Positions 5,323-63,742 of a stretch of DNA of 64,000 nt are shown piece after piece. The stretch spans positions 62,001-126,000 of IMG/VR virus record IMGVR_UViG_3300020473_000010, one strand, 5' to 3'. Below the pieces are notes generated by a model. The model saw only the letters and a list, made by a program, of their open reading frames with translations. It had not been told where the DNA came from and did not search any database. Position 1 is the first letter of the stretch. Every line of letters starts with the position of its first letter. Made by a program: the position numbers and the translations under genes.

Positions 5323-5505
5323 TCAATAATCCGGAAAATCGCCGTCCAATCTTTTCCACGATATCCAAAGCCAGCTACTTATAATTAACACACCAAATAA
5401 GAAAAACCAAAAATAATTTCCCGGAAAAGATAAAGAAAAACCGCTGGTAATTAAATAGCCAAATCCTGTACCTAGTAAAAATTCTTTTGTCTTAAATTTA
5501 TCCAT
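5323..5505 (-). CDS. Small two-TM membrane protein
   Basis: Two hydrophobic segments, coupled ORF. Confidence 0.6.
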   Translation of the reverse strand: MDKFKTKEFLLGTGFGYLITSGFSLSFPGNYFWFFLFGVLIISSWLWISWKRLDGDFPDY

Positions 5506-6196: not shown

Positions 6197-6236
6197 ATTT
6201 CTTTCCTTTGGCTGTAATATTCTTATATAATTTAAC

Positions 6237-50212: not shown

Positions 50213-52831
50213 CTAATCTTTAATTATGCCGGCCAATCTTTGCCATCTATAAACGTTTTCTTGAAATAGCGGTTTCGGCAATACGTCTTCCAAAGCTTGA
50301 TTCAGTGCTTTTCTAAATCCTGCTGCCCCAGCTTTTTTATAATCATCTAAAAATCCTTTGAAAATGGCCGGTTGTAATTCTGGGTCTGGATTGCCAGCGG
50401 CTCCGAAAGCTTGATGGAACTTAGGAAATCCTGCTTTTTTAATATATGCGGGTTTTTTAGAGTCTCCAGCTTCGGCGGCGGATTTGATATCAAACCCGAA
50501 TTCATCTTCGAAATATTTTAAGAAATTTTCATTATCAAGCAAATCAAGCGCTTTAGTAGTTAATTCGTCTTGGCCTTTAATTTTATCAGTTAAATCCGAA
50601 AGAAACTCTTTTAAAAGAACTTTTGATTCTATAATAAATGGAAGATCTGCATTTAATTCTTTTAGCCCTGTTAAGAAAAGAGCCACTGCATCTCCATCGA
50701 TTTTTTTATCTATTTTTTTAATCGCATCAACTGTAGCGCCGATTTGTATTTTGGGAAGTCCACCTAATTCCCATTCAATATCAAATTTATCTTTAAAGAA
50801 TTTCTTTACTTCTTTATTTTTAAAATATTTTTGCATCTGAGCTTCGGCTTCTTTGTCGTTAGAAGCTGCATTATATATTAAACCCGGAAGGAAGTCGTCC
50901 CATTTAGTTTTTTCTTCAACTAATAATGAATTTAAAGAATTTAAATGAATTGATTCAAGTTTTAATTTTTCCCATTGGTTTTCATCGTGTTGGCCGACGC
51001 CTTTCGGACCTTGGCGAAATATATCATAAATCTTGGCTAATATTTCAGGCTTTAATTCGGTTGGGTTTGGAATTTCTTTTATAAAATCTTCTTTAGAAAA
51101 GGTTCGTATATCATCTCCGGTTTCATCTTGAGGTTCTGCATTCAAAGTGTCAGGTGTATCAACTTCAACATCATTGACGTCATCATCTTCGAGTTTTCCT
51201 AAATTCAATACTGCCTTAATAAAATCTTCTAAATCTTTTGGGGTTTTGATGTCCAATTTAGCTAAATCAGCAGATAAGTCTTTTGCCTCAGGTTCGGTAT
51301 TGGGATCAATAATAATTTCTTCATTGTTGTCGTCGTTCGTTAATGTAACTGGAGAATTGTCGTTAGTTAATCCAGCAATGGCCTTGTTTAAATCACTAGC
51401 GGCCCCATCTTCTAGTGTCGAAGTAAGATCTGATGCTTCTTCTGCTTTTTCTACTCCTAAAACACCCCAAATCTTTGCAGCAGTTTCTTTGTCAGAGTCG
51501 AATTTAAATTTATAGTCAATGCCTTTTATTAATTCTGAGATTTCAGTTATAGCTTCCGTTAATAAGTTTTTAAATCCAGCATGATGGAAAAATTTAGATT
51601 CTTTAAAGATTTCTTGAACTGGTTTTTCTGATGCAGCCATTACCAAAGATAAAACAGCTTTATCCATTTCATCAATGTCTTTAAAAGCCTCATGTTTATT
51701 CATTGCCTGCATAAAAGGTTCACCATCATCAAATAGCTTTTCTACTTCTGGAGAAACTTCTACAGTAAGCATATCTTTTAAAGTGCTTTCTGCTTTATCA
51801 ATAACCTCTGATTTGATTCCCATTCCAAATTCTTTAAAATCGAACCATCCCATGGAAAAAATTCCGCTTTTGCCATCTTCTCCCAACAAAATCTTTGGAG
51901 ACAAAGTAGTATCTTGTTCAATTTCGAATTCTAGCAAATCTTTCATATCTGCAATTGCTTTTAATTCTTTCTCTGCTTGCTTTGCAGCGTTTTCGATATT
52001 TTTTCCTAATTTCCCAAAAACTCTTTTTGCTTCATTTTCAGCTTGAATAAATTTTTTATTTAATTTTTCAACTTCTTTCTTTTTTGCATCATCCCAGCCT
52101 TCATGCCACCCAGAAACCCACTGCAATATTGTTGATGGCTTATATCCGTCAGGATTTAAATCTGGTGGAGGAGGACCATCTGTTGCAAACGATATTAATC
52201 TTATTTTTTCCATCTTTTCTGCAACATCCGGTGTAATCCCAGAAGCTTCTAGAAGAAGCGAAGCTAAGCTTGATTTATGAATAAAGTTAAAAGATTCTTT
52301 TTGTTGATTTCCTCCAGACTCTTCTTGAGATTGATCATCTTTCTTTTCGCTGGAAGCATCAGAACCTGACAATTCTTTTGGGAGACCTTGTAGAAAATTA
52401 ATTTCTTCATCTGAAATTGCAACTGCATTCATCCAGCCGGCGATATCTGTAATGACAGATTCAAACATGTCTAGATTCATTTTTGCATGGGTTGCAAGGT
52501 ATTTTATTTTAGTAGCTGCTTCGTCTTCCTGTTTATCTTTTGCGTTTGTTCCAGTAATTGCACCAGCAAAACGAGAAAACATTCCAGGTTCTTCCATCGA
52601 TTTTTCGCTGATTGTTCCGGCCGCTTTTTCTAAGTTTTTAAATACTGTTGATACTTTTTGTTTCAACGATTTTAAATCATCGGTATCGTCAGGCATTCTT
52701 TCAAATCTTAGAATGACTTCATCTAAAAGAGAGTCTAGGTCTTGTTGTGCTTGAAGGATTTCTCCTTCAGTCAAAAGCCTTGCTTCCGTAATTAATTTAC
52801 ATTTTTTTCTTGATTCAATAAATATATTCAA
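50213..52831 (-). CDS. Large acidic multi-module protein (putative processed virion polyprotein)
   Basis: 872 aa; repeated ES...L(L)xE segments; C-terminal RWQRLAGII. Confidence 0.75.
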   Translation of the reverse strand: MNIFIESRKKCKLITEARLLTEGEILQAQQDLDSLLDEVILRFERMPDDTDDLKSLKQKVSTVFKNLEKAAGTISEKSMEEPGMFSRFAGAITGTNAKDKQEDEAATKIKYLATHAKMNLDMFESVITDIAGWMNAVAISDEEINFLQGLPKELSGSDASSEKKDDQSQEESGGNQQKESFNFIHKSSLASLLLEASGITPDVAEKMEKIRLISFATDGPPPPDLNPDGYKPSTILQWVSGWHEGWDDAKKKEVEKLNKKFIQAENEAKRVFGKLGKNIENAAKQAEKELKAIADMKDLLEFEIEQDTTLSPKILLGEDGKSGIFSMGWFDFKEFGMGIKSEVIDKAESTLKDMLTVEVSPEVEKLFDDGEPFMQAMNKHEAFKDIDEMDKAVLSLVMAASEKPVQEIFKESKFFHHAGFKNLLTEAITEISELIKGIDYKFKFDSDKETAAKIWGVLGVEKAEEASDLTSTLEDGAASDLNKAIAGLTNDNSPVTLTNDDNNEEIIIDPNTEPEAKDLSADLAKLDIKTPKDLEDFIKAVLNLGKLEDDDVNDVEVDTPDTLNAEPQDETGDDIRTFSKEDFIKEIPNPTELKPEILAKIYDIFRQGPKGVGQHDENQWEKLKLESIHLNSLNSLLVEEKTKWDDFLPGLIYNAASNDKEAEAQMQKYFKNKEVKKFFKDKFDIEWELGGLPKIQIGATVDAIKKIDKKIDGDAVALFLTGLKELNADLPFIIESKVLLKEFLSDLTDKIKGQDELTTKALDLLDNENFLKYFEDEFGFDIKSAAEAGDSKKPAYIKKAGFPKFHQAFGAAGNPDPELQPAIFKGFLDDYKKAGAAGFRKALNQALEDVLPKPLFQENVYRWQRLAGIIKD

Positions 52832-52861: not shown

Positions 52862-53272
52862 TTATTCAAGATCTAGGAAACAAACCTCTATTCCTGAATT
52901 TTTAAGTAATTCTACTCCAGATAAATCTCGATATTTTCTAGAATAAACAACTCTATTGATACCACCATTAATTATGGCCTTAGCACACCCTTTGCACGGC
53001 GATAATGTAAGATACATCGTTTTTTTCTTGGGTGTATTATAATCCATTTTAATTAATGCGTTAATTTCAGCGTGGATAAAGCCTGAATGGCCTGGTTCTG
53101 GACTTTCAACTTGGTTTGATCCACCTTTTTGATCTCCGTTGTATCCAATAGCAAGTACCTGGCAATTATCTTGAGAAACAATGCAGCATCCAACTTGAAA
53201 TCTAGGATCATGGCTTCTTCTTGCAATGTTTGTTGCGAAATCCATCCAAATTGTGTCCCAATCAGGTCTCAT
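52862..53272 (-). CDS. dCMP deaminase
   Basis: HAEINA, PCKGC, GYNG. Confidence 0.92.
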   Translation of the reverse strand: MRPDWDTIWMDFATNIARRSHDPRFQVGCCIVSQDNCQVLAIGYNGDQKGGSNQVESPEPGHSGFIHAEINALIKMDYNTPKKKTMYLTLSPCKGCAKAIINGGINRVVYSRKYRDLSGVELLKNSGIEVCFLDLE

Positions 53273-54212
53273 GAGAAACTTCCTTTACTTCTTCAGGTGG
53301 TTTACCATCATTTAATTGTTCTTTCTCCTCTTCGGATTCAGGTTCTTTGTCAGTTTCGGGAAGTTCGTCGTCAAAAATACTATCCGGATGAACTTCCGAA
53401 GAAAGCCTAAAACCTGCAGCTTTTTTATGTCCTCCTCCTTTAAACTTTTTGGCAATTTCTGAAACATCTGTTGTTTCGTGAAACGCTCTAAGGGAACAAT
53501 TATACCCAAGTGTTTCATGATCATAATACCATATCATTGCAAAATCACAATCCGGGGCAAGCCTGGCGCCAATCTCGGACATCCAATGAGATGAATTGAC
53601 AACTAGTACATCTTTTCCATCAAACTTACGTTTTTGGGCTTTCTCGCAAACTTTTTTAATTACAGTTTTTGAATATGCTAAGATGAAAGATCCTCTTTTA
53701 ACAGCATCGTCAAAAACTGAATCATCTTCAAATTTTTCGTATTCTTCAAATTCCCATGGTACCATATCGAATGCTGCAGAAAATTCTTTTGAATACGGGA
53801 GTTCCCAAGTCCAAAGATCGCGATCTTGAATATATTGGATAAATTTAGGCGCTTCTTTACCCGGGTGGAAAAATTCCCAAGCTAACATTGCTCCGGATTT
53901 ATTCATATCAAAACGAGTGTTTGATATATCATGAAGTTCTACCATCGCAGATTTATGGTGATCAATTATAAGAAATGCTTCTGCTTCTTTAATTAATTTT
54001 TTAGTTGTGGCATTGTTATAAGAAAAATCTAGACAAACAACTTTTTTCCCGTTTATATCTGGCGGGGTTGTGCCATGGGAACAGGCGATATATTCTGCTC
54101 GGTTTCCCAAAAGTTTCCAAGCAGAGTAAGCTGCTCCAAATCCATCGTTACAATTCGCGTGGTATAATACCACTTCGACTGATGAAGGTTCTAACATGTT
54201 GATTTCCTCCAA
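53262..54212 (-). CDS. DHH/DHHA1 phosphoesterase
   Basis: YHANCNDG, LDFSY, IDHH, QDRDLW, GGGHKKAAG. Confidence 0.88.
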   Translation of the reverse strand: MEEINMLEPSSVEVVLYHANCNDGFGAAYSAWKLLGNRAEYIACSHGTTPPDINGKKVVCLDFSYNNATTKKLIKEAEAFLIIDHHKSAMVELHDISNTRFDMNKSGAMLAWEFFHPGKEAPKFIQYIQDRDLWTWELPYSKEFSAAFDMVPWEFEEYEKFEDDSVFDDAVKRGSFILAYSKTVIKKVCEKAQKRKFDGKDVLVVNSSHWMSEIGARLAPDCDFAMIWYYDHETLGYNCSLRAFHETTDVSEIAKKFKGGGHKKAAGFRLSSEVHPDSIFDDELPETDKEPESEEEKEQLNDGKPPEEVKEVSHET

Positions 54213-54230
54213 GAGAGAGTAGAATTCTAA

Positions 54231-54665
54231 TTATCTACAATTAATTTCGGTTCTATTAAGTTTACGACCATAATCATCTTCTAACATAACAAACCCATCT
54301 CTTGCTCCTGGGCTTCCGTTTAAAACTTCTAACATCTTACTATCTTCGATAGCTGTTATTCTATACGGACTTTGAGCCTGGATTAAAATAATGTCCCCAG
54401 AATGCAAATTAAAATAATTCCCATCTTCGCCATCGATATCGCCAAACTCTTTTTCTCCTTTTGCAAAAACACGAACATGACCTTCGAGACAATATATTAA
54501 TTGATTTTTCATATCGTAATATTTAAGAGAGGTGCGTTTGTTAGCTTTTAAAGTAATAATTTTACCAGACATCCCAAATGGGGAAGAAAAATGTTCTTCA
54601 TCTCCCCAGGGTTTGGATAAAAAACTTGATTTGGATTTCCATATAGACACTACAATAACTCCCAA
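54231..54665 (-). CDS. Cupin-fold protein (sugar isomerase-like)
   Basis: KPWGDE, GKII...RTSL, SPYRI...LEV, LEDDYGR. Confidence 0.7.
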   Translation of the reverse strand: MGVIVVSIWKSKSSFLSKPWGDEEHFSSPFGMSGKIITLKANKRTSLKYYDMKNQLIYCLEGHVRVFAKGEKEFGDIDGEDGNYFNLHSGDIILIQAQSPYRITAIEDSKMLEVLNGSPGARDGFVMLEDDYGRKLNRTEINCR

Positions 54666-55645
54666 TAGTTGAAAACTTTTTCAAGACCTTCTTCAAACTG
54701 AACTTTAGGATTCCAGCCTAATTTTTTTAATGCAGATATATTGGCTTGAGTATGTTTTACATCTCCTTTTCTTGCAGGTGCTTGTTCGATGTTTGTATAA
54801 CCTTTTTCAAAAAATTTTGATAATATATAATTATTAGAGTAAGATTTTCCAACTCCAACATTGAATATTTTTTCTTCTTTCAGATCAGCTTTACTAACAC
54901 AGATGTTAGCAGACACAATATCTGAAACATAGATTAAGTCTCGAGATTGCGTGCCATCTCCATCTTTTCTTAAGGGTTCTTCATTTGATGCCTTAGTACA
55001 CCAAGCACTAATTGCTGTGGAATATGGGGAAGATCCGTCTTGGCCCGGGCCATAAACATTAAAATATCTTAATGCTACCCAGTCGAGATTATATAAATTT
55101 TCAAATAGCTCTAAATATTGCTCTACGCAAAGTTTTGATAAGCCATAAGGATTAGTAGGTTTTTTATTATCTGATTCTTTAGTTGGTAAATTTTTGTTAT
55201 TTCCATATACAGCTGACGTTGAACTGAAAATAAGTCTAGATTCTCCTTTTGCACAAGCCAAAGCAAGATCTAAAGATTTATTAAAATTTTCATCTGTTGC
55301 ATCCAAGGGGTTTGTGACGGACCATTCTACTCGAGGCTTTGCTGCTAGATGAAAAACTTTAGAGAAAAACCCATCTTCAATCCTTTCCAATATTGCTGAA
55401 TGTGTAAAATCAGCCTCTAAAAATACTATTTTGGGCTTTCTTGGATCATCTTTTACGTCGTAAAATCTACTTAAAGCAGATACCAAATTACGAACTGGTA
55501 CTTTGAAAAAAGATTCAGGTTCAATTTTCGAATTCGAAAAATCATCAACAACCCAGACGGTATAATCTAAAGTTATTAATTCTTTAACTAAATGGGATCC
55601 AATAAAACCTAATCCTCCTGTTACTAAAATATTTTTAGATTTCAT
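54650..55645 (-). CDS. NAD-dependent nucleotide-sugar epimerase/dehydratase
   Basis: TGGLGFIGS, SSTSAVYG, YGLSK, RYFNVYGP, RDLIYV. Confidence 0.92.
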   Translation of the reverse strand: MKSKNILVTGGLGFIGSHLVKELITLDYTVWVVDDFSNSKIEPESFFKVPVRNLVSALSRFYDVKDDPRKPKIVFLEADFTHSAILERIEDGFFSKVFHLAAKPRVEWSVTNPLDATDENFNKSLDLALACAKGESRLIFSSTSAVYGNNKNLPTKESDNKKPTNPYGLSKLCVEQYLELFENLYNLDWVALRYFNVYGPGQDGSSPYSTAISAWCTKASNEEPLRKDGDGTQSRDLIYVSDIVSANICVSKADLKEEKIFNVGVGKSYSNNYILSKFFEKGYTNIEQAPARKGDVKHTQANISALKKLGWNPKVQFEEGLEKVFNYWELL

Positions 55646-56088
55646 TATACTATCCCCGTGGATCCAAATCCACCCGCGCCTCTGTCGGTAGTTTCTTCAA
55701 AAAGATCATCATTATTAATTTCCTCAATTCCAGAATGATCAACTGGAACTAAAAGAAACTGAATTAATTTTTGCCCTGGTTCAATTTTTTGAGGTTTATT
55801 TGAAGTGTTAATTAAGTGTAAGTGGATTTCACCTTGGTAATCACTGTCTACAACACATGCGCCGACCATTAATCCAGACTTAAGGGCTACGCCAGATTTG
55901 TTGAATGCGATAAGCGCATAGCCACAAGGCACATTAGCTCTAATACCCGATGGAATAAAGAAACGGTCACCGGGTTCAATTGTACAAAGACTGTCTGGGT
56001 AATTATTGGGTACGTAAAAGTCAATTCCTGCTGATCCATCTGTTCCTCTTGTTGGTAGTTTAACATCTCTAATTCTAGATACTTTCAT
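55645..56088 (-). CDS. dut: Trimeric dUTPase
   Basis: AGIDF, NKSG, VDSDYQGE, RGAGGFGSTG; likely start 56088. Confidence 0.92.
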   Translation of the reverse strand: MKVSRIRDVKLPTRGTDGSAGIDFYVPNNYPDSLCTIEPGDRFFIPSGIRANVPCGYALIAFNKSGVALKSGLMVGACVVDSDYQGEIHLHLINTSNKPQKIEPGQKLIQFLLVPVDHSGIEEINNDDLFEETTDRGAGGFGSTGIV

Positions 56089-56282
56089 TTTCTCTCCTTT
56101 ATAATTTTTATGCATTCATCAGCCTCTGCTATAGACCGAATTAAGTTAATAATTTCAGTAGCAAGATCTGGATGTTCTCCAATCGCAACTGGGTTTTTTA
56201 AATAAATTTCTAAATTTGCTTCTGTTTTTAATTTATTAGCTTCAAAATGAAGCAAAGCAGCTTTTAATAATTTGTTTTCCAT
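56085..56282 (-). CDS. Small conserved phage protein
   Basis: YLKNPVAIGEHPDL motif. Confidence 0.7.
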   Translation of the reverse strand: MENKLLKAALLHFEANKLKTEANLEIYLKNPVAIGEHPDLATEIINLIRSIAEADECIKIIKERK

Positions 56283-56665
56283 TATTTTCCCTTTGAATCA
56301 ATTGATGTATTGTAGTTAGCTGAAGGTGGAACTAATCTTGTTGGAGTGTCTGGGCCCATGATTTCGGGATCATTAAATTCTGAATGATTTTTGTTGATAT
56401 AGTTTTGCCAAGCACCTATATAAGCCGCAGCATCTAGTAAATTATCTTCTTTGTGATTATATGATTGCCTACTAAATTTTAGTGCAATTAAAGCAGCAAA
56501 CATATCATGGGCCGTTAATTCTTTGCCGGTCATTCCTGAACAGATAGCAGCGGCTCTTTCCATTCCTTCGCCGAATGGACCATATTGACGTGCCTTTTCT
56601 TCAGATCTGTGGTTGACGATCTCGTCTGCAAGAGCGAGAATATTACGGTTGAGTTGGTCGCTCAT
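56282..56665 (-). CDS. DUF6378-like (dNTP diphosphohydrolase-associated) protein
   Basis: RQYGPF, LKFSR, KEDNLLDAAAYI; likely start 56665. Confidence 0.65.
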   Translation of the reverse strand: MSDQLNRNILALADEIVNHRSEEKARQYGPFGEGMERAAAICSGMTGKELTAHDMFAALIALKFSRQSYNHKEDNLLDAAAYIGAWQNYINKNHSEFNDPEIMGPDTPTRLVPPSANYNTSIDSKGK

Positions 56666-57524
56666 ATATAATCTCCTTAATTTCGTTTGTATGTTGATTG
56701 ATTTCTTCTTTAGATAATTCACGACAAGGCATAGCAATCCTGGGAATACTAGCCGTTGTTATTGTACTTGCAAGTTTCCATTTGTTCAATTCTGGCCATC
56801 CATCTACAAAAACTTTTGCATGATAATTGTTTAAAATTTTATCCATCATTGACCAATGTGTTTCATATATGTGAAATGAACCAGCTGTATGATAATACTC
56901 TCCTAAATCTAATTTTTGGTTCTCTGGAAAAGCTTGGTTTAAGTCATTAAGCATCAACTGCTGGAACATGCAAAACGTAAATACATCATTGCAAAAACCA
57001 AATATTGCATCGTTACTTCGCATATTAACTCCCATGTACAAACAATTATTCCTAATAAAGAAATGAATATATTGAGTACATGGATAGTCGGCTTTATTTT
57101 TGCCTTTATGATATGGCTGATTGATGACCAGAGTAGCTCTTCTAGAATCTCTATCTTTAATCAATTCATTTCTGCACCAATTCCATTGTTCGCCTAAAAG
57201 GTACATTCCATAATTACTTTCGACATGACCAGTAGCATCCGATATCTTATTCCATATGCTAGCTAATTTTCCTATATTGGTTGAACTAGGATCGCGACTA
57301 AGGTACCATAGCCATTCAGCTACGGCATAATCCGGATTGAATCTTCTAGCTCTAGGTTCAATTGAAAGCGCAGTTGGGTCTTTTATAGTCATTGAATAAA
57401 ACAATAATTCACGTTGTTTGCTCCCTCGAGAATTAACTTGTTTTCCGCGAATTTTAAGATTATATAAAGACTCAACAAATGCTTCGTTTAAATCTTTATA
57501 ATAATTTTTAGCTACAATATTCAT
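56643..57524 (-). CDS. Thymidylate-synthase-family enzyme, T4 gp42-like (dCMP hydroxymethylase/methylase candidate)
   Basis: DSRRA, YPCT, MRSNDAIFGFCNDV, GSFHIYETH. Confidence 0.8.
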   Translation of the reverse strand: MNIVAKNYYKDLNEAFVESLYNLKIRGKQVNSRGSKQRELLFYSMTIKDPTALSIEPRARRFNPDYAVAEWLWYLSRDPSSTNIGKLASIWNKISDATGHVESNYGMYLLGEQWNWCRNELIKDRDSRRATLVINQPYHKGKNKADYPCTQYIHFFIRNNCLYMGVNMRSNDAIFGFCNDVFTFCMFQQLMLNDLNQAFPENQKLDLGEYYHTAGSFHIYETHWSMMDKILNNYHAKVFVDGWPELNKWKLASTITTASIPRIAMPCRELSKEEINQHTNEIKEIIYERPTQP

Positions 57525-57577
57525 AAAAACTCCCTACCTTTGTATATAATACAGGTTTTTTTACATATGAACAAAAA

Positions 57578-60500
57578 TTAATCTGTGAATATTTCAAACC
57601 TACTCCATCTTGTACTTTTTCCGAATGGATTTTCCGATACTTCAGCAACACACACACTATATGGTTCAATTTGTGTTCTTCCATCCCAGGACCAAATATT
57701 CATCCACTCTTGTTTTCCATTTGCACCCATGATTTTGCAACGAAGATATTTTTTATTTGTCTTTGTTGTTCGAACTTGGGTTGATATCATAATAAACCAG
57801 TAAAAATATTTACCAGAATATTCATCAATTGGTAACCATCCTTCTTGGCGGAACCTTGTAAGATATCTTGGAGGAACAACTTTTTCAACTGCGACAGACC
57901 CCAACAAATCCATATCGTTTTTGATGATTTCTTTTCTAGTCCATGGATCGCAATCGGCGTTTTCTTCAATTGCGGCTTTTAAAATATCTTGGCCTTCTCT
58001 AGGATTGCGTTTTAGAGATTTCCTCAACTTCATCCAATTTGGAATTATAGAATCATACACATGTTTATAATTGTCGAATAATTTTCCATGGCCTACCATA
58101 TCCATTGATTCTAAAGCCTGAATCCTGATTAAGCTTTCTACAGATCGCTTATTAAATTTACTTAACTTCCATGTACCATCTTCGTTCCAAAACATGTTCC
58201 ATACATCTGTATACGGTCTATTTTCCATAATTTCATCAATAGCAGTGTCGCCAATACCTTTACAAGACCTAAATGATGGCATGAATTTTTTGCCTTCTAA
58301 AATTGTCCAGCTTTTTTCTGCATAGTTTATATCGATAGGTACAATTTCATAACCAAGCGTTTGAACTTCAGCAAAAGCCTTACCTCTTTTGTCTGGATTT
58401 CCTTCCATGGATTCCAGATACGCACATAGCCATTCTTCCTCGTAATACGTCATTAACCAGGCACAATAATAAGAATCTATAGCATATGCTACTGCATGAG
58501 ATTTATTAAACCCGTAAGCAGCAAACAACATAATATCATCAAAAAGCTTATTTGCAATATGAGGACGAACACCATTTTCAATACATCCACCGACAAAGCG
58601 TTCTTCAAGGGCTTTTGCTTTAGCTAAAGCATCTTTTGAAGATCCTTGAGGTTTCATCATTTTTCTTACGGCATTACATTCATTTTTTGGAATTCCAGCA
58701 ACTCTATTTGCTAACTCCATAACTTGTTCTTGAAAAATAATACAGCCATAAGTTTCTTGCAAAATTTCTTCAATAAGATGATGTCCATATTGGGCTTCAT
58801 AATCTTTTTTATTTCTAAGATACAATCTATCAACATTAGCACCTAAAGGACCTGGACGATAAATTGATGTCAGAGTAGCAATATCAACAATAGATGTTGG
58901 CTGGGCTTTTTTAAATAATTGCTGGGCTCCGGCTTGGGTACACTGAAATATTCCTGCCCATTTACCTTGATGGTAAACGTTTTTATACACATTTTGGTCA
59001 TTAAAATCAATTACATCTGTACCCATGTTTTTATCAAACCAGTGTTTTATTTGGCTAAAAGAAACCTCTTTATATCCCTTTTGGCGTCTTAATATAAGCT
59101 CGATTGTTCTCTCTATAATCCTTAAAGTTTCTAAACCCAGAAGATCAAATTTAACCCAACCAAAGTTTTCTAAATGTTTATACGAAGCTCCTTCTACCCA
59201 AGGTGTTTGAAGTTCACCTCTTGCAAGAATTAATGGCATTCTTTCTGCAATATTTTCTGAAACAATAACGCCGCCAGCGTGGCGTCCAAGCGCTTTGTTT
59301 TGTTTGAACAATACATCAATTGGCTCAGCAATCTCTGGGTGATCAGAAATAAGCTTCATGAACTTGTGACTATATTTTAATGCCCATTCTAAAGTTGGCT
59401 CTATTGGGCCGTTAATTTCTACCCCATCAGATCGCAGCCCATTTTTTACATCAACATCTAGTGTGCTCAATGCTTTGTTAACTTCTTTGAATTCAATTCC
59501 ATAAAATCTAGAAATATCTTTCACTAGGGATTTGAGTTTGAATGTATTGTAATTTGAAATTGGAATGATATTTTCATTACCAAATTTATTTCTCATTAAT
59601 TCTAAAAGTTTATCGCGATCACCGATATCAGTATCAATATCTGGCATGTCTTTTCTGTCTGGTGAAAGAAACCTTTCGAATAAAAGACCATATTTTAGTG
59701 GGTCAACATCGGTTATGCCTAGCACATAGTTAACTAAAGAGCCTGCACCAGAACCGCGACCTGGGCCTACGAACATATGCTTTCTAGCTAAGTCTATAAT
59801 TGCTTTTGTTGTTAAAAAATATTCAGAAAACTTCTTGTTTTTAATAATTCTTAATTCGTATTTTAGTTGGTCAATATATTCCCGTGTTGTTAAGCCTTTT
59901 TTGACCAAGCCTTTTTTGCATTCTTCAATTAGTGCTTGATCTGCAGTTTTGTTTTTGGGAATTACATAAGATGGGAGTTTTTGAGAGCAATCAGGCTGAA
60001 TATCTCCAATCATTTCATGTGCTATATCATGTGTTCTTTCAACTGCTTCACAAATTATTTCGTCATTATAAAAATCCATGCCACCGGTAGTGCTTTTATA
60101 GCTTTCCCAAACCTGTTCTGCGTTTTTAGGATATAATTCACACTTTAAATCTTCACGAGTCTTGGGAAGGCTATCCGGATTAAAGGTTTTATGATTCATC
60201 CATCCTAATTTTTTATAAAGCTCTCTTTCTTTCCAGTGTTCAGGCCGAGAATAGTGTGAATCGCAAGTAACAATTAATTTGTCTTGAAGACTGTTTTGGT
60301 TTGCAAATTCAATCAATGCTCGATTAACCAAATGCTGGGCTGGAAGTTTATTAAATTGTAATTCTAGCATTACAGCATCATTTCCGACTGAATTAGTCAA
60401 ATGATCATAAGAATTTCCAATATTTGTTAAAATTCTTTTCAATAAAGCATCATTGTCTAAAAGACTGGGTTTGAGTTCATCAAATTCAATACCTTGAACT

Positions 60501-61165
60501 TGTCGAAAAACTTCATAAGCCATAGGTCCACCGATACACGCGGTGCTGACCATTAAATGGCCGCCTTTCGATGCTTCTTTGATCATTTTATAATCTACTC
60601 TAGGAAACCTATAAAATCCTTCAGAATACCCTCGGGAGATAAGATGAAAAAGACGTTGGAGGCCAATAGAAGTTCTTGGCAGTACTACTAAGTGATGTCG
60701 GCGTTTAATTGGATCAAAAAATTTACCGCTTTTGGATTCTTCTTCGTTTTCAACAGTAAGTCCAACCTCATCTTTTGCTACTTCTACTATTTCATCATCC
60801 CCGTCTGTTATTGCCCATAGGGGAGATACGATTTCCGACTTAAGCCTTTCAAGCCTTTCAATTTCTGTTTGGTTACCTTTTTTCTTCGCACGAGAAAGGT
60901 CATATTCTATTTGCCAAACATTTAAATCTGGATGAACATACATTTCGCAGCCAGGAATAAATTTAAAATCGACTCCTGCCTTCTTTATTTTTTCTGCATG
61001 TAAATAAGCATGGGCAAAACTGTTCATATGTCCATGGTTTGTTAAAGCAAAAGCATTCATGCCATTTTCGACTACAAAATTAATGTGGTCTTGAGGATAA
61101 TCTAGTCCATCAAAGGTGGAAAATCCATCATGAGCATGAAGGCCTACAAATTTGGTTGGTTTCAT
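57578..61165 (-). CDS. dnaE: DNA polymerase III alpha subunit
   Basis: PHP HAH/TNHG/CE/DSHY, GRGSGAGS, PDIDTD, RHAGG, KFDLLGL, YGFNKSHA. Confidence 0.95.
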   Translation of the reverse strand: MKPTKFVGLHAHDGFSTFDGLDYPQDHINFVVENGMNAFALTNHGHMNSFAHAYLHAEKIKKAGVDFKFIPGCEMYVHPDLNVWQIEYDLSRAKKKGNQTEIERLERLKSEIVSPLWAITDGDDEIVEVAKDEVGLTVENEEESKSGKFFDPIKRRHHLVVLPRTSIGLQRLFHLISRGYSEGFYRFPRVDYKMIKEASKGGHLMVSTACIGGPMAYEVFRQVQGIEFDELKPSLLDNDALLKRILTNIGNSYDHLTNSVGNDAVMLELQFNKLPAQHLVNRALIEFANQNSLQDKLIVTCDSHYSRPEHWKERELYKKLGWMNHKTFNPDSLPKTREDLKCELYPKNAEQVWESYKSTTGGMDFYNDEIICEAVERTHDIAHEMIGDIQPDCSQKLPSYVIPKNKTADQALIEECKKGLVKKGLTTREYIDQLKYELRIIKNKKFSEYFLTTKAIIDLARKHMFVGPGRGSGAGSLVNYVLGITDVDPLKYGLLFERFLSPDRKDMPDIDTDIGDRDKLLELMRNKFGNENIIPISNYNTFKLKSLVKDISRFYGIEFKEVNKALSTLDVDVKNGLRSDGVEINGPIEPTLEWALKYSHKFMKLISDHPEIAEPIDVLFKQNKALGRHAGGVIVSENIAERMPLILARGELQTPWVEGASYKHLENFGWVKFDLLGLETLRIIERTIELILRRQKGYKEVSFSQIKHWFDKNMGTDVIDFNDQNVYKNVYHQGKWAGIFQCTQAGAQQLFKKAQPTSIVDIATLTSIYRPGPLGANVDRLYLRNKKDYEAQYGHHLIEEILQETYGCIIFQEQVMELANRVAGIPKNECNAVRKMMKPQGSSKDALAKAKALEERFVGGCIENGVRPHIANKLFDDIMLFAAYGFNKSHAVAYAIDSYYCAWLMTYYEEEWLCAYLESMEGNPDKRGKAFAEVQTLGYEIVPIDINYAEKSWTILEGKKFMPSFRSCKGIGDTAIDEIMENRPYTDVWNMFWNEDGTWKLSKFNKRSVESLIRIQALESMDMVGHGKLFDNYKHVYDSIIPNWMKLRKSLKRNPREGQDILKAAIEENADCDPWTRKEIIKNDMDLLGSVAVEKVVPPRYLTRFRQEGWLPIDEYSGKYFYWFIMISTQVRTTKTNKKYLRCKIMGANGKQEWMNIWSWDGRTQIEPYSVCVAEVSENPFGKSTRWSRFEIFTD

Positions 61166-61433: not shown

Positions 61434-62159
61434 TTACAATTCTAAATTAACAATTTCTTTAATTAAAACCGCTCTTGGGGGAACTGGAATTTTTTGTTGG
61501 TGCAAACATAGGATTAATATATTAACCCGGTCTTCGAGGTTTTCCCAACTATTTCCCCAGTTCCATGAAACTGAATTTTGAATTTCGTTAATTTGTTTTG
61601 CGTCTTTTTCATATAGTCTGTTTAATTTATCTAATTGTTTTCTAGATGATAATTTATCCGTAAATTTATTTAACATGATTCCTAAAAACAATATTTCATC
61701 CCAATCGGTGTTTTTGTAGGATATCATTGCTCCATCTAAAATCTGTTTTCTTAAAAATTGTTCCTCTATAGATAATTTGAGAGAATCTATTTTATCCGGA
61801 TGACAATGTTTCATAATTTCTCTCCAGATTTCTTTGGCCCAGGCTGGGATTTCTTCTTTTTCTATATTTGGAATATCTAAATTATTTATAGGCCCTGAAT
61901 GTTCTTTGGTGTTTTTAGATTCAGTATAAATTTCTTCACGTTGATTTGAAACAACAATTTCTTGTTGGTTATTATTAATAGCTTCTCTTTTTTCTTGGTT
62001 TAAAGGTTTGTTAGAATTTAAAAATGAATTTATTAATTCCTGTAGCTCTAAAGCATATTCGGAATTTAATAAATTCATTTCTTTTGCCATGGATCGAGTA
62101 TTTTTCACCATTCTAGCGGAAGAAACTAGTCGTTTTTTTGATACTCGAGATAATCCCAC
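61434..62159 (-). CDS. Protein with J-domain-like HPD segment
   Basis: EIWREIMKHCHPDK; GTG start. Confidence 0.6.
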   Translation of the reverse strand: MGLSRVSKKRLVSSARMVKNTRSMAKEMNLLNSEYALELQELINSFLNSNKPLNQEKREAINNNQQEIVVSNQREEIYTESKNTKEHSGPINNLDIPNIEKEEIPAWAKEIWREIMKHCHPDKIDSLKLSIEEQFLRKQILDGAMISYKNTDWDEILFLGIMLNKFTDKLSSRKQLDKLNRLYEKDAKQINEIQNSVSWNWGNSWENLEDRVNILILCLHQQKIPVPPRAVLIKEIVNLEL

Positions 62160-62169
62160 ATTTTATCTC

Positions 62170-62403
62170 CTAATCAAACAACGTTTGTTTTTTAGAAGAT
62201 TGTTGTTCTTGAAGCTCTACAAGCATCTTTTGTAAATTAGTCTCAAATTGACTGGAATATTCCGGAGAGATTTCAATATTTCCATCTTGTACAACAAACT
62301 GAATTTGCCTAAGATGGTCGACGATATCTGTTCCAGTTAAAATAGCTACCTGAAGACATTTTGCGATTTGGGCGATTGTTTGATCTGTAAATTTTGAATT
62401 CAT
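62170..62403 (-). CDS. Small conserved hypothetical protein
   Basis: 77 aa ORF. Confidence 0.7.
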   Translation of the reverse strand: MNSKFTDQTIAQIAKCLQVAILTGTDIVDHLRQIQFVVQDGNIEISPEYSSQFETNLQKMLVELQEQQSSKKQTLFD

Positions 62404-62409
62404 AATATT

Positions 62410-62754
62410 TTACTCCACTTTTTCTGATTTAGCTAACAAGGGATATCCTTGCGATCTAAAGAACTTTACCACGTTAGATGATTTTGTATCCGCAATTTCT
62501 TTAGAATATGGTCCTCCAGCGATTCCTTTTCCTTTTTTGTGTACTGACATCATGATTGTTGTTGCTGATTCTATTGAATGATGAAAAAAATGACACAATG
62601 AAATTGTAACTAAATCCATAGGTGTATAATCATCATTATAATAAATAACCTGATATTTAGAAGGTGGCTGTATTTTATTTTTAGACTTTTCTCGATCTAA
62701 TAAATCAACACCGGCTCCTGAATTGTTTTTTGTATCTTTCTTTTTTTGAGGCAT
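62410..62754 (-). CDS. clpS: Clp protease adaptor ClpS
   Basis: PPSKYQVIYYNDDYTPMDLV, MMSVHKKGKG, EIADTK, YPL; likely start 62754. Confidence 0.9.
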   Translation of the reverse strand: MPQKKKDTKNNSGAGVDLLDREKSKNKIQPPSKYQVIYYNDDYTPMDLVTISLCHFFHHSIESATTIMMSVHKKGKGIAGGPYSKEIADTKSSNVVKFFRSQGYPLLAKSEKVE

Positions 62755-62759
62755 ATATT

Positions 62760-62969
62760 TTAAACGTCTTGATTGAAACAATGCACAACGGCATCTCTAT
62801 AGAACAAGACTTTTTCTCCTTCTTTGGGGCTACAAAGGGAAGTTTCTTGTAAAATAATCATTGTTTCGACTGTATTCCCTAAGGTAAATTCAACGATTAT
62901 TTTATCACCAACAACATCATCGACTGTTCCTAGCATAAGCAAACCAGCTATCATCATTTCATTAATCAT
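62760..62969 (-). CDS. Small OB-like hypothetical protein
   Basis: GTVDDVVGD...VEF...C.PKEGEKV. Confidence 0.6.
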   Translation of the reverse strand: MINEMMIAGLLMLGTVDDVVGDKIIVEFTLGNTVETMIILQETSLCSPKEGEKVLFYRDAVVHCFNQDV

Positions 62970-63742
62970 TATTTCTGAACCTTTGGTACCCAGTATGTTG
63001 ATCTTTTATCATTTGTTTCTTCTTTTATTACTTCGTTTCCATCCGGATCTTCTTGTTTTCCATATATAAGAAACTTTGAAGGGCTGTCAGCATAAGTTTC
63101 GTTAACTTGATATGATTCTTTCATTACTTGCTTAATTGATCTATTAAGTACTGCTAATTCTCCATCTGATAAATCCCCAACATGGCGGTGAGGTGAAATT
63201 TGGGCTAGCCATAAAGAATCAGCTTTTATATAATTCCCTATTCCAGAAACTATGGATTGATCCATTAAAGCCTTGGTAATACCCCATGAGTCTTTATTTC
63301 GTAATCTTGCTATAAAATCTTTGTCCGATAAATCTTCTGAAAGCATATCAGGACCTAAAGATTTTAGCTTATTTATCATGTTGTGTTTACCGCGGACAAA
63401 TTTCAAAGTACCAAAATTACGTTGGTCATTAAAAAATACTTTGGTTTTATCTGATAAAACAAATTTTATTCTAGAATGGTTCGTTTGAGAGTTTGACCAA
63501 AAACCTGTCATGCCAAACGTAGAATATATAAATGTTTCTTTTTCACAAATCCAGTAACAAAATTTTCCATGGACTCCAGGTCCAATGATTTTTAACGGCA
63601 ATTGTTTAAGAAAATCCTCATATCCTGAAGGGGATTTCTTACTGTATCTTCCAGAAAGTATTTCTATAGAAATTATTGTTTTTCCGGAAATTTGAGAAGC
63701 TAATTGTTCTCCGTTTCTTTTAACCTCTGGTCCTTCTGGCAT
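62969..63742 (-). CDS. Fpg/Nei DNA glycosylase (no Zn finger)
   Basis: MPEGPEV, HGKF, FGMTG, FNDQRNFG, LGPD, GIGNYI; C-terminal Cys4 absent. Confidence 0.9.
   Translation of the reverse strand: MPEGPEVKRNGEQLASQISGKTIISIEILSGRYSKKSPSGYEDFLKQLPLKIIGPGVHGKFCYWICEKETFIYSTFGMTGFWSNSQTNHSRIKFVLSDKTKVFFNDQRNFGTLKFVRGKHNMINKLKSLGPDMLSEDLSDKDFIARLRNKDSWGITKALMDQSIVSGIGNYIKADSLWLAQISPHRHVGDLSDGELAVLNRSIKQVMKESYQVNETYADSPSKFLIYGKQEDPDGNEVIKEETNDKRSTYWVPKVQK

What the first reader, a model, noticed from the sequence alone, without database searches (positions are those of the whole stretch)
52862..61165. Putative modified-cytosine locus: dCMP-specific TS homologue next to sugar enzymes and DnaE
Seen: the TS-family protein has RSNDAIFGFCND, with Asp where ThyA has Asn177. 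It lies in one run with a DUF6378-like protein, dUTPase, NDP-sugar epimerase, cupin, DHH phosphoesterase, dCMP deaminase and dnaE. Established: T4 gp42 (RSNDVVFGFRND, Asp179) is dCMP-specific, and sugar-modified hmC protects T-even DNA. Inference: this phage may replace C with 5hmC, 5mC or a glycosylated derivative replicated by a family-C polymerase. No glycosyltransferase is visible in this window.
Basis: partly seen in the sequence, partly recalled or inferred. Interest (0 to 1): 0.65.

Follow-up and report, generated by a model that had tools for sequence, protein, structure and literature searches.

The report
Phage dCMP hydroxymethylase gene cluster
A 289-kb marine phage carries, beside its DNA polymerase, an enzyme whose active site matches the phage T4 enzyme that makes 5-hydroxymethyl-cytosine, so the phage probably builds modified cytosine into its DNA; the neighbouring sugar genes cannot be tied to that modification.

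Summary
Nine same-strand genes at 52862-61165 encode DnaE, a thymidylate-synthase (TS) homologue with RSNDAIFGFCND, DUF6378, a small phrog_1811 protein, dUTPase, a UDP-hexose 4-epimerase-like SDR, a cupin, a DHH/DHHA1 phosphoesterase and dCMP deaminase.

In E. coli ThyA numbering it has Asp at 177 (dCMP rather than dUMP) and Asp at 143 (hydroxymethyl rather than methyl). It keeps Asp at 169, so it is not a 5-hydroxy-dCMP synthase. Eleven of 12 residues around C5 equal T4 gp42. Its best solved relatives are T4 dCMP hydroxymethylase (9e-21) and MilA; ThyA scores 3e-6 at best. An intact ThyX lies about 300 nt beyond the window, so thymidylate synthesis is already covered.

I conclude it is a 5-hydroxymethyl-dCMP synthase. 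5mC and 5-hydroxyC are unlikely.

The link to sugar is not supported for this genome. No DNA glycosyltransferase, T4-type dCTPase or dNMP kinase was found. The only glycosyltransferases sit in a polysaccharide-type island more than 110 kb away.

Relatives fill the same slot with a T4 alpha-glucosyltransferase homologue, or with a cassette holding a 5-hmdU-DNA-kinase-family protein and a C5-methyltransferase-like protein.

DUF6378 follows the TS gene in every relative examined.

This is a new member of a known kind, of moderate interest.

The parts
57578..61165 (-). DnaE-type (family C) DNA polymerase III alpha, 1195 aa; first gene of the conserved run
   Evidence: PF02811, PF07733, PF17657 and PF14579 hits; phrog_405 E 1e-222. 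It is 59-75% identical in related loci and always lies directly upstream of the TS homologue.
56643..57524 (-). TS-family enzyme, 293 aa, predicted dCMP hydroxymethylase (5-hydroxymethyl-dCMP synthase). Key residues: E70, Y105, R128/R129, D146, C149, T150, R169, S170, N171, D172, G176, D180, H218, Y220.
   Evidence: PF00303. Best PDB sequence matches are T4 dCMP hydroxymethylase 1b49 (E 9e-21) and MilA 5b6d (6e-15), against ThyA at 3e-6 or worse. Alignment to T4 gp42, E. coli ThyA and RB69 gp48 gives Asp at ThyA positions 143, 169 and 177; 11 of 12 residues around C5 equal T4 gp42. The signature is invariant in 8 relatives.
56282..56665 (-). DUF6378 protein, 127 aa, a five-helix bundle of unknown function. 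Its ATG lies 23 nt inside the TS-homologue gene, with AAGGAG 8 nt upstream.
   Evidence: PF19905. It sits immediately downstream of the TS homologue in every relative examined, at 64-79% identity. Start context. The model (pLDDT 75) has no informative PDB match.
56085..56282 (-). Small conserved phage protein, 65 aa, function unknown
   Evidence: phrog_1811 E 1e-16. A 68-aa gene sits at the same place in L037.
55645..56115 (-). Trimeric dUTPase (probable true start at Met10, coordinate 56088)
   Evidence: PF00692; TIGR00576 at 104 bits, above cut-off; phrog_135. It is 55-73% identical in all relatives.
54650..55645 (-). SDR-family UDP-hexose (Glc/GlcNAc) 4-epimerase-like enzyme, 331 aa; its start overlaps the dUTPase stop by 1 nt
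   Evidence: PF01370 E 2.5e-51. GalE TIGR01179 scores 165 bits, below the 262 cut-off. Best PDB matches are UDP-GlcNAc/Glc 4-epimerases: 6dnt (5.6e-57), 4zrm, PelX 6wjb and WbpP. The STS...YxxxK motif is epimerase-type and the TDE dehydratase motif is absent (read). Present in most relatives but not all.
54231..54650 (-). Small cupin, 139 aa, related to phosphomannose-isomerase-type cupins but with the His metal ligands replaced by Tyr; function unknown
   Evidence: Weak PF07883 and phrog_7851 hits. The atlas's structural neighbours are PMI-type cupins (TM 0.76-0.79). AlphaFold model pLDDT 88.7; nearest small PDB chains are archaeal PMI 7zvy (TMt 0.79). The SLKYY and PYR motifs are conserved. 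All loci examined that carry a homologue of this cupin place it in this same gene run; two weaker matches (L033, L034) lie in other contexts and were not confirmed as homologues.
53262..54212 (-). DHH/DHHA1 phosphoesterase (NrnA/RecJ-like), about 311-316 aa; the most conserved protein of the run
   Evidence: phrog_4771 E 2e-77. PF01368 and PF02272 score just below cut-off. It is 69-81% identical in relatives. No PDB sequence match.
52862..53272 (-). dCMP deaminase, 136 aa, with intact HAE and PCxxC zinc motifs
   Evidence: PF00383 E 1e-22; phrog_174 E 2e-46. Conserved at the end of the run in relatives.

Best explanation
The region is the nucleotide-supply arm of the replication module of an uncultured marine jumbo phage (288.7 kb).

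Its TS-family gene encodes a folate-dependent dCMP hydroxymethylase of the T4 gp42 type. The catalytic Cys149 attacks C6 of dCMP. Asp180 reads the cytosine N3/N4 face. A one-carbon unit is taken from methylene-tetrahydrofolate. Because Asp146 replaces the hydrophobic gate residue of ThyA, water rather than hydride quenches the exocyclic methylene, which gives 5-hydroxymethyl-dCMP.

Thymidylate is made separately: dCMP deaminase and dUTPase supply dUMP, and ThyX converts it to dTMP.

The 5-hm-dCMP is then phosphorylated by a kinase not yet identified and built into phage DNA by the adjacent DnaE polymerase. The DNA would therefore carry 5hmC in place of some or all C.

Shown here: gene content, active-site signature, the paralogous ThyX and the conserved synteny. 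Inferred: the product, its incorporation into DNA and the extent of replacement.

The epimerase and cupin are optional passengers in a variable slot of this locus. Their tie to DNA modification in this genome is unproven.
For: 1. PF00303 membership. phmmer against the PDB ranks T4 dCMP hydroxymethylase first (E 9e-21) and CMP hydroxymethylase MilA next (6e-15), with ThyA at 3e-6 or worse.
2. Alignments put Asp at ThyA positions 177, 143 and 169, and Thr at 147. Eleven of 12 residues within the C5 shell equal T4 gp42, against 7 of 12 for ThyA and 6 of 12 for RB69 gp48. The rules are published: N177D means dCMP, L143D/E means hydroxymethyl, D169N means 5-hydroxy-dCMP synthase (PMC13326640). Positions 177 and 147 are the two residues most associated with cytosine-modified viral contigs (PMC8670742).
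3. The phosphate-binding arginines, the deoxyribose ligands His/Tyr and the folate-contact residues (W80, D169, G173 equivalents) are kept.
4. This is the only PF00303 gene in the genome. A separate intact ThyX (E 5.5e-49, RHRTWS motif) lies about 300 nt beyond the window end.
5. The signature and the order DnaE, TS homologue, DUF6378, dUTPase ... DHH, dCMP deaminase are conserved in more than a dozen related loci.
6. In relative L011 (TS homologue 56% identical, same signature) the slot after dUTPase holds sugar-activation genes and a T4 alpha-glucosyltransferase-family enzyme (PF11440 at 42 bits, above cut-off; phrog_2888 E 6e-98). That is the classic user of 5hmC in DNA.
7. TS homologues, dCMP deaminase and cytosine modification are known to co-occur on viral contigs (PMC8670742).
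8. G/C-containing palindromes are not avoided (4-mer observed/expected 0.83-1.40). This is consistent with a protected genome but is weak evidence.
Against: - No biochemical or DNA-composition data exist for this uncultured phage.
- The helper enzymes that T4 needs for full replacement were not found. There is no gp56-type, MazG or PRA-PH dCTPase and no gp1-type dNMP kinase or thymidylate kinase.
- The only candidates are two uncharacterised AAA_33 / zeta-toxin-like P-loop proteins, one NUDIX protein, the trimeric dUTPase and the DHH enzyme. Full replacement of C therefore remains uncertain.
- The residue-143 rule for methyl versus hydroxymethyl is a published correlation, not a proven determinant. 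I could not align a verified dCMP methyltransferase.
- The enzyme has a C-terminal extension of about 50 residues that T4 gp42 lacks.
- hm-dCMP could also be deaminated to hm-dUMP by the neighbouring deaminase.
Confidence: 0.66

Rival explanations
1. The enzyme is a dCMP methyltransferase, so the phage carries 5-methylcytosine as Xanthomonas phage XP-12 does.
For: Asp at ThyA position 177 is shared by all dCMP-using TS homologues. The ThyA N177D mutant itself makes 5-methyl-dCMP (cited in PMC8670742).
Against: Position 143 is Asp, invariant in the clade, as in T4 gp42 and MilA. Methyl-forming enzymes keep a bulky hydrophobic residue there (PMC13326640; alignment). Eleven of 12 shell residues equal the T4 hydroxymethylase. 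A relative pairs the same enzyme type with a T4 AGT-family glucosyltransferase, which needs a hydroxyl acceptor.
Confidence: 0.08
2. The enzyme makes 5-hm-dCMP, but the neighbouring dCMP deaminase converts it to 5-hm-dUMP. The modified base in DNA would then be 5-hydroxymethyluracil or a derivative replacing some thymine.
For: dCMP deaminase is a fixed member of the locus. Several relatives carry a protein of the 5-hmdU DNA kinase family (PF18723, 44.8 bits in L030; also L029 and L036) in the variable slot.
Against: This genome has no such kinase. It keeps ThyX, dUTPase and thymidine kinase, all of which feed normal dTMP. Known hmU phages use Asn177-type dUMP hydroxymethylases (my own knowledge, not tested here). 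The route would be roundabout.
Confidence: 0.08
3. The 5hmC is further glycosylated in this phage. The epimerase, and perhaps the cupin, supply an unusual UDP-sugar, and an unrecognised glycosyltransferase encoded elsewhere attaches it.
For: The epimerase is closest to UDP-Glc/GlcNAc 4-epimerases. It sits in the slot that holds a DNA glucosyltransferase in L011. The genome has two GT-B (GT1) genes next to a PD-(D/E)XK nuclease at 237-241 kb.
Against: No homologue of T4 alpha- or beta-glucosyltransferase, the L011 AGT or the RB69 arabinosylation genes exists in the genome. All glycosyltransferases lie in a 20-kb island with GDP-mannose dehydratase, an aminotransferase, sulfotransferases, methyltransferases and GT10/GT47 enzymes beside baseplate genes; that pattern is typical of polysaccharide or virion glycan synthesis. 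Epimerase and cupin occur independently of each other in relatives. A thymidine kinase sits between them in several relatives. The cupin lacks the usual metal ligands.
Confidence: 0.13
4. The gene is an ordinary thymidylate synthase, redundant with ThyX, and the DNA is unmodified.
For: It belongs to PF00303 and keeps the catalytic Cys, the phosphate-binding Arg residues and the folate contacts. dUTPase and dCMP deaminase, both dUMP suppliers, are neighbours.
Against: Five of the 12 active-site shell residues differ from ThyA, including Asn177 to Asp and His147 to Thr. All NCBIfam thymidylate-synthase models score far below their cut-offs (best 47 bits against a cut-off of 175). ThyA structures score 15 orders of magnitude worse than T4 hydroxymethylase. 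ThyX is intact.
Confidence: 0.03

Closest known systems
Phage T4 gp42, deoxycytidylate 5-hydroxymethyltransferase (PDB 1B49/1B5D/1B5E)
   Same: Same fold and family. Best solved match (E 9e-21). Catalytic Cys, Glu60 equivalent, Tyr96 equivalent, RSND motif, Asp179 equivalent and Asp145 equivalent are all present; 11 of 12 residues around C5 are identical. In both phages it coexists with dCMP deaminase and a separate thymidylate synthase.
   Different: Only about 28% identical overall. It has a C-terminal extension of about 50 residues, and Cys instead of Arg before the ND pair (GFCND against GFRND). It lies next to a family-C rather than a family-B polymerase. The genome lacks homologues of gp56 dCTPase, gp1 dNMP kinase and the alpha/beta glucosyltransferases. 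The thymidylate synthase is ThyX, not a ThyA-type enzyme.
5-hydroxy-dCMP synthases of RB69 (gp48), DLP3 (gp80) and RL38JI (Lee et al. 2026, PMC13326640)
   Same: TS-family, dCMP-specific (Asp at 177, acidic residue at 143), and encoded beside sugar-nucleotide genes near the DNA polymerase.
   Different: Those enzymes have Asn at ThyA position 169 and have lost W80, E58 and G173. This one keeps all four. Only 6 of 12 shell residues match RB69 gp48. No arabinose-5-phosphate isomerase, HAD phosphatase, kinase/nucleotidyltransferase or arabinosyltransferase homologues are present.
MilA, CMP 5-hydroxymethylase of mildiomycin biosynthesis (PDB 5B6D)
   Same: Second-best solved match (E 6e-15). Asp at both positions 177 and 143 (PMC13326640). 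It is also longer than T4 gp42.
   Different: MilA is bacterial and prefers the ribonucleotide CMP for an antibiotic pathway. Here the context is a phage replication module, and the deoxyribose-binding His/Tyr pair is kept. Ribo- versus deoxyribo-nucleotide preference was not tested.
TS homologues on cytosine-modified viral contigs found by MetaGPA (Yang et al. 2021, PMC8670742)
   Same: Asp at 177 and a non-His residue at 147. Co-occurrence with dCMP deaminase / MafB19-type deaminase domains on phage contigs.
   Different: Those contigs often add a PRA-PH-type pyrophosphohydrolase and a carbamoyltransferase. PRA-PH is absent here; no carbamoyltransferase was seen among the proteins scanned, but its families were not searched for. 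DUF6378 takes the place directly after the TS gene.
E. coli ThyA, canonical thymidylate synthase
   Same: Same fold. Catalytic Cys146, Arg166, Ser167, Asp169, Arg126/127, Tyr94, Trp80 and His207/Tyr209 equivalents are kept.
   Different: The substitutions are Asn177 to Asp, Leu143 to Asp, His147 to Thr, Gln165 to Met and Cys168 to Asn. The closing C-terminal segment of ThyA has no counterpart. All curated ThyA models score below cut-off.

Membership tests
T4-type dCMP hydroxymethylase (5-hm-dCMP synthase), TS superfamily | Thymidylate-synthase fold / PF00303 membership | tested here: met
   PF00303 at 53.7 bits, above the 24.3 cut-off; phrog_160 E 1e-32.
T4-type dCMP hydroxymethylase (5-hm-dCMP synthase), TS superfamily | Catalytic cysteine (ThyA C146 / T4 C148) and nucleotide-phosphate arginines | tested here: met
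   C149, R128/R129, R169 and S170 align with them. They are invariant in 8 relatives.
T4-type dCMP hydroxymethylase (5-hm-dCMP synthase), TS superfamily | Asp at ThyA position 177 (T4 Asp179), which selects dCMP | tested here: met
   D180 aligns with T4 D179 and ThyA N177.
T4-type dCMP hydroxymethylase (5-hm-dCMP synthase), TS superfamily | Acidic residue at ThyA position 143 (T4 Asp145), which admits water so that the product is hydroxymethyl | tested here: met
   D146, invariant in the clade. The rule is taken from PMC13326640.
T4-type dCMP hydroxymethylase (5-hm-dCMP synthase), TS superfamily | Closer in sequence to verified hydroxymethylases than to thymidylate synthases | tested here: met
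   T4 dCH E 9e-21 and MilA 6e-15, against a best ThyA-type score of 3e-6.
T4-type dCMP hydroxymethylase (5-hm-dCMP synthase), TS superfamily | Enzyme converts dCMP plus methylene-THF to 5-hm-dCMP | not testable with these tools
   This needs an enzyme assay or the in vivo plasmid-DNA assay of PMC13326640.
Canonical thymidylate synthase ThyA | Asn177 and His147 (uracil recognition), hydrophobic Leu143 | tested here: not met
   Asp, Thr and Asp at these positions. All NCBIfam ThyA models score far below their cut-offs.
5-hydroxy-dCMP synthase (RB69 gp48 type) | Asn at ThyA position 169 (D169N) | tested here: not met
   D172 is kept. RB69 gp48 shows N in the same column of the same alignment. Signature from PMC13326640.
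dCMP methyltransferase (XP-12 type, 5mC) | dCMP-specific Asp177 together with a hydrophobic residue at 143, so that hydride transfer gives methyl | tested here: not met
   Asp177 is present, but position 143 is Asp. The rule is a correlation from the literature. No verified XP-12 sequence was available for alignment.
Complete T-even style hmC replacement pathway | dCTPase that removes dCTP (T4 gp56 / MazG / PRA-PH type) | tested here: not met
   No phmmer hit to gp56. PF03819, PF01503 and PF08761 are absent from the 288.7-kb genome. Only a trimeric dUTPase and one NUDIX protein are present.
Complete T-even style hmC replacement pathway | dNMP kinase that accepts hm-dCMP (T4 gp1, PF21448) | tested here: not met
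   PF21448 and PF02223 are absent and there is no phmmer hit to gp1. Two uncharacterised AAA_33 / zeta-toxin-like P-loop proteins remain as candidates.
Complete T-even style hmC replacement pathway | DNA glycosyltransferase acting on 5hmC | tested here: not met
   No homologue of T4 beta-GT or of the AGT-family protein of L011 exists in this genome. The GT1 proteins match only generic glycosyltransferase PHROGs. The feature is met in relative L011.
Thymidine-hypermodification systems (5-hmdU DNA kinase pathway) | 5-HMUDK-family kinase plus an Asn177-type dUMP hydroxymethylase | tested here: not met
   No HMUDK homologue in this genome, and the TS homologue has Asp177. HMUDK_hel-family proteins do occur in relatives L029, L030 and L036.

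The most novel reading that the evidence does not exclude
This marine jumbo-phage lineage may run a cytosine-modification system built differently from T4's.

- An invariant, translationally coupled pair, dCMP hydroxymethylase plus DUF6378, would form the core. DUF6378 would be a new accessory factor of pyrimidine-C5-modifying enzymes; it also neighbours ThyX in an unrelated phage.
- The slot after dUTPase would be a swappable 5hmC-decoration cassette. In relatives it holds either a T4-AGT-like glucosyltransferase, or a 5-hmdU-DNA-kinase-family protein together with a C5-methyltransferase-like protein that keeps the catalytic Pro-Cys but shows no SAM motif.
- The second cassette would imply a so far undescribed decoration of 5hmC in DNA by phospho-activation.
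- In the present genome the epimerase and the metal-less cupin would be the remnant, or a minimal form, of such a decoration pathway.
Probability: 0.15. Interest if true: 0.75.

Novelty: new member of a known kind. Interest (0 to 1): 0.5.

Why it matters
If the prediction holds, a widespread oceanic jumbo-phage lineage replaces cytosine with 5hmC. Five marine metagenome runs hold this locus, and a 306-kb relative is filed in GenBank as a bacterial MAG contig.

This would extend T-even-style pre-replicative cytosine modification to uncultured marine phages that replicate with a DnaE polymerase and lack the T4 helper enzymes. That raises two questions: how dCTP is excluded, and which kinase handles hm-dCMP.

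It also matters in practice. Modified DNA biases virome library preparation, restriction-based methods and nanopore basecalling.

The conserved DUF6378 partner and the variable cassette in relatives give concrete, testable leads to new DNA-modification chemistry.

Tried and rejected
1. DUF6378 as a MazG-like dCTPase. The AlphaFold model (pLDDT 75, five helices) gave no Foldseek PDB match better than E 0.86. VIA-align gave only generic helical-bundle matches with Z up to 6.8. The idea is unsupported.

2. Physical complex of the TS homologue with DUF6378. Complex prediction scored 0.00 and returned no verdict. This is evidence neither for nor against binding.

3. T4 and RB69 helper genes. phmmer of T4 gp56, gp1, beta-GT and Dam, and of RB69 gp45-55, against all 380 ORFs found nothing at E <= 1.

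4. Family searches of the whole genome. MazG, PRA-PH, dUTPase_2, DNMK, thymidylate kinase and C5 DNA methylase were all absent.

5. The distant glycosyltransferases as DNA glycosyltransferases. PHROG and Pfam scans place them in generic or polysaccharide families. This reading is rejected as the likeliest but not excluded.

6. The cupin as a defined sugar enzyme. The fold search confirms a cupin but gives no specific family; archaeal PMI and many unrelated cupins score alike.

7. Provirus integrated in a host tmRNA gene. The whole tmRNA gene lies inside the record, and its 3' end meets the terminal copy on circularisation. An assembly overlap or terminal redundancy is therefore more likely.

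8. Read-level evidence for modification. Only Logan contigs of 2014 marine metagenomes hold the locus, with no raw or nanopore reads.

9. Restriction-site avoidance. No depletion of G/C palindromes was found. This is compatible with protection but not diagnostic.

10. The single-sequence pattern scan for cupin relatives found nothing. The scan with an alignment worked.

11. The large HMMER search of protein representatives was not run, because no claim here rests on an absence of relatives.

Full report
**What the window is.** The 64-kb window is bases 62001-126000 of a 288,697-bp IMG/VR virus record that CheckV rates 96% complete. Of 380 ORFs, 342 lie on the minus strand. The GC content is about 35% throughout. 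The locus occurs in at least five marine metagenome runs from 2014. A 305,838-bp relative is filed in GenBank as a contig of a 'Methylococcaceae bacterium TMED69' MAG.

**Check of the observation.**
- DnaE, 57578-61165
- TS-family protein, 56643-57524, with RSNDAIFGFCND at residues 169-180
- DUF6378, 56282-56665
- a 65-aa phrog_1811 protein, 56085-56282
- trimeric dUTPase, 55645-56115
- SDR epimerase, 54650-55645
- cupin, 54231-54650
- DHH/DHHA1 phosphoesterase, 53262-54212
- dCMP deaminase, 52862-53272

Successive genes abut or overlap by 1-23 nt, so this is a single operon-like run.

**Typing the TS homologue.** phmmer against all PDB sequences ranks T4 dCMP hydroxymethylase first (E 9e-21). 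CMP hydroxymethylase MilA is next (6e-15). Thymidylate synthases come only at 3e-6 to 1e-3. All NCBIfam thymidylate-synthase models score far below their cut-offs.

I aligned the protein with T4 gp42, E. coli ThyA and RB69 gp48, taken from annotated records, and with eight relatives. Three published rules can then be read off:
- ThyA Asn177 to Asp gives dCMP specificity.
- Leu143 to Asp/Glu goes with hydroxymethyl rather than methyl products.
- Asp169 to Asn marks the flavin-dependent 5-hydroxy-dCMP synthases (Lee et al. 2026, PMC13326640).

The query has Asp180 at position 177, Asp146 at position 143 and Asp172 at position 169. Of the 12 residues that the paper lists within 6 Å of C5, 11 equal T4 gp42, 7 equal ThyA and 6 equal RB69 gp48. 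Position 147 is Thr rather than His. Positions 147 and 177 are the two most associated with cytosine-modified contigs in the MetaGPA study (PMC8670742). The catalytic Cys, the phosphate-binding arginines, the deoxyribose-binding His/Tyr pair and the folate-contact residues are kept. The signature is invariant in all relatives.

The enzyme is therefore best read as a folate-dependent 5-hydroxymethyl-dCMP synthase. It is unlikely to be a dCMP methylase and is not a 5-hydroxy-dCMP synthase.

**Is it redundant with a thymidylate synthase?** It is the only PF00303 gene in the genome. An intact ThyX (E 5.5e-49, RHRTWS motif) lies at genome 126316-127038, about 300 nt beyond the window end. dCMP deaminase and dUTPase supply dUMP, and a thymidine kinase lies at genome 2097-2681 (assigned through its 54% identity to the Pfam-typed TK of L009). 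Normal dTMP synthesis is thus fully provided for, which leaves the TS homologue free for a second job.

**Context and conservation.** Related loci came from IMG/VR and other assemblies: L003-L011, L029, L030 and L035-L039. They share the order ThyX ... Fpg/Nei ... ClpS ... DnaE, TS homologue, DUF6378, dUTPase, [variable slot], DHH, dCMP deaminase. To the right of the window the module continues with ClpP, a class II ribonucleotide reductase, DnaB, a 5'-3' exonuclease and RecA.

DUF6378 follows the TS gene in every relative where that region is present, at 64-79% identity. That is more conserved than the TS homologue itself, which is 49-62% identical. In this genome its ATG lies 23 nt inside the TS gene, behind an AAGGAG. 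DUF6378 also neighbours ThyX in an unrelated Faecalibacterium phage (PMC13432834). In some phages it is fused to DUF4406 (PF14359), which I recall as a nucleoside 2-deoxyribosyltransferase-like family; that assignment was not checked here. Its five-helix model matches no solved fold, and a complex prediction with the TS homologue gave no verdict. Its function stays open. A role in pyrimidine-nucleotide handling is my inference.

**The sugar genes.** The SDR is closest to UDP-Glc/GlcNAc 4-epimerases (6dnt at 5.6e-57, 4zrm, PelX, WbpP). It has the epimerase-type STS...YxxxK motif and lacks the TDE dehydratase motif.

The cupin fold is confirmed (pLDDT 88.7). Its nearest neighbours are phosphomannose-isomerase-type cupins, but the His and Glu metal ligands are replaced (SLKYY..NQ and PYR).

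Every confirmed homologue of this cupin that I examined sits in this same locus. It occurs once without the epimerase (L039). The epimerase occurs without the cupin in L004 and L035. A thymidine kinase often lies between the two genes. They are therefore optional members of the locus, not an obligate sugar pair.

In this genome the slot holds nothing else. There is no homologue of T4 beta-GT, of the AGT-family protein of L011, or of the RB69 arabinosylation genes.

The only glycosyltransferases lie at 237-258 kb. They sit in an island with GDP-mannose 4,6-dehydratase, a DegT aminotransferase, another SDR, FkbM methyltransferases, three sulfotransferases, and GT10, GT47 and GT2 enzymes, next to baseplate gp25. 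That is the make-up of a polysaccharide or virion-glycan pathway. Glycosylated 5hmC is therefore possible but unsupported for this genome.

**What relatives put in the slot.**
- L011 (TS homologue 56% identical, same signature) has a HAD/kinase-like protein, a cytidylyltransferase-like protein, a T4 alpha-glucosyltransferase-family enzyme (PF11440 at 42 bits, above cut-off; phrog_2888 E 6e-98) and a C5-methyltransferase-like protein.
- L007-L010, L029, L030 and L036 carry a cassette made of a phrog_13881 protein, a myo-inositol-1-phosphate-synthase-like protein, FkbM methyltransferases, sulfotransferase-like proteins, a 5-hmdU-DNA-kinase-family protein and a C5-methyltransferase-like protein. 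The kinase-family protein scores 44.8 bits on PF18723 in L030 and is also found in L029 and L036. The methyltransferase-like protein keeps CPCAGLS but shows no FxGxG or ENV motif by simple pattern search.

The AGT homologue is independent support that this enzyme clade yields a hydroxyl-bearing cytosine in DNA. The kinase cassette beside an Asp177-type enzyme hints at a cytosine hypermodification not yet described. None of these genes is in the present genome.

**Gaps in the pathway.** T4 needs gp56 dCTPase and gp1 dNMP kinase for full replacement. Neither family, nor MazG, PRA-PH, dimeric dUTPase or thymidylate kinase, was found. The candidates are two AAA_33 / zeta-toxin-like P-loop proteins (genome 43679-44416 and window 5498-6277), one NUDIX protein, the trimeric dUTPase and the very conserved DHH enzyme. 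I therefore rate 'the enzyme makes 5-hm-dCMP' higher than 'all C in virion DNA is replaced'.

G/C palindromes are not depleted. That is compatible with a protected genome but is weak evidence.

**Verdict.** 5hmC is the predicted base. 5mC and 5-hydroxyC are unlikely, and glycosylation is unproven here. It is a new member of a known kind.

The added interest lies in three points: the invariant DUF6378 partner, the missing T4-type helper enzymes, and the swappable cassette in relatives.

Noticed in passing
Outside the window: genome G000 bases 3-355 (-) and 288645-288697 (loci L016, L027): A complete tmRNA gene (tag peptide ANNNYFYDSERLAA) sits at the very start of the record. The last 53 nt of the record repeat its 3' end at 52 of 53 positions. 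Circularising on this repeat keeps the gene intact, so this looks like a circular or terminally redundant assembly of a phage that carries its own tmRNA rather than a provirus att pair.
   Followed up: partly
Outside the window: genome G000 about 237,400-258,700 (loci L024, L025): A 20-kb glycan-synthesis island beside baseplate gp25 and a 1709-aa protein. It holds two GT1 enzymes, several GT2 enzymes, two GT47-like enzymes, a GT10 fucosyltransferase-like enzyme, GDP-mannose 4,6-dehydratase, a DegT aminotransferase, an SDR, FkbM methyltransferases, three sulfotransferases and a PD-(D/E)XK nuclease. It suggests a sulfated or methylated glycan made by the phage.
   Followed up: partly
Related loci L007-L010, L029 (1-8402), L030 (1511-8388), L036 (10693-16121): A cassette lies between dUTPase and the epimerase. 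It holds a phrog_13881 protein, a myo-inositol-1-phosphate-synthase-like protein, FkbM methyltransferase(s), a PF18723 5-hmdU-DNA-kinase-family protein, sulfotransferase-like proteins and a C5-methyltransferase-like protein. The last keeps CPCAGLS but shows no FxGxG or ENV motif by regex. All of this sits next to an Asp177-type TS homologue, which makes it a possible new cytosine hypermodification route.
   Followed up: partly
Related locus L011: 1585-5446: The same slot holds a HAD/kinase-like protein, a cytidylyltransferase-like protein, a T4 alpha-glucosyltransferase-family protein (PF11440 above cut-off; phrog_2888 E 6e-98) and a C5-methyltransferase-like protein.
   Followed up: partly
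window 56643-56665 (TS / DUF6378 gene overlap): The DUF6378 start codon lies 23 nt inside the TS-homologue gene, with AAGGAG 8 nt upstream, which suggests translational coupling. DUF6378 is also next to ThyX in Faecalibacterium phage FP01 (PMC13432834) and is fused to DUF4406 in other phages.
   Followed up: partly
window 61434-63742 and 49037-49732: Neighbouring genes include a protein with an HPD (J-domain-like) motif (61434-62159), ClpS (62410-62781; a ClpP gene lies just outside the window), an Fpg/Nei DNA glycosylase (62969-63742) and a protein whose homologues carry the Fe/Mn superoxide dismutase C-terminal domain (49037-49732). Whether the glycosylase handles deaminated or oxidised modified bases was not examined.
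   Followed up: no
window 50213-52831: An 872-aa, very acidic, low-complexity protein with no family hit follows the deaminase. Proteins of 681-1031 aa occupy the same position in relatives.
   Followed up: no
Related locus L003: 4884-9182 and 14488-15885: The DnaE ORF is 1432 aa here against 1195 aa elsewhere. A NifU-like protein carries a weak Hint-domain hit (E 7.7e-4, below cut-off). Both suggest inteins in this relative.
   Followed up: no
Related locus L037 (GenBank NHDW01000006.1, 305,838 bp): A close relative of this phage with the same locus is deposited as a contig of a bacterial MAG named 'Methylococcaceae bacterium TMED69'. This is probably a binning error.
   Followed up: no
whole genome G000: Palindromic 4-mers show no avoidance (observed/expected 0.83-1.40), and G/C-containing 6-mer palindromes are on average over-represented (median 1.27).
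   Followed up: yes
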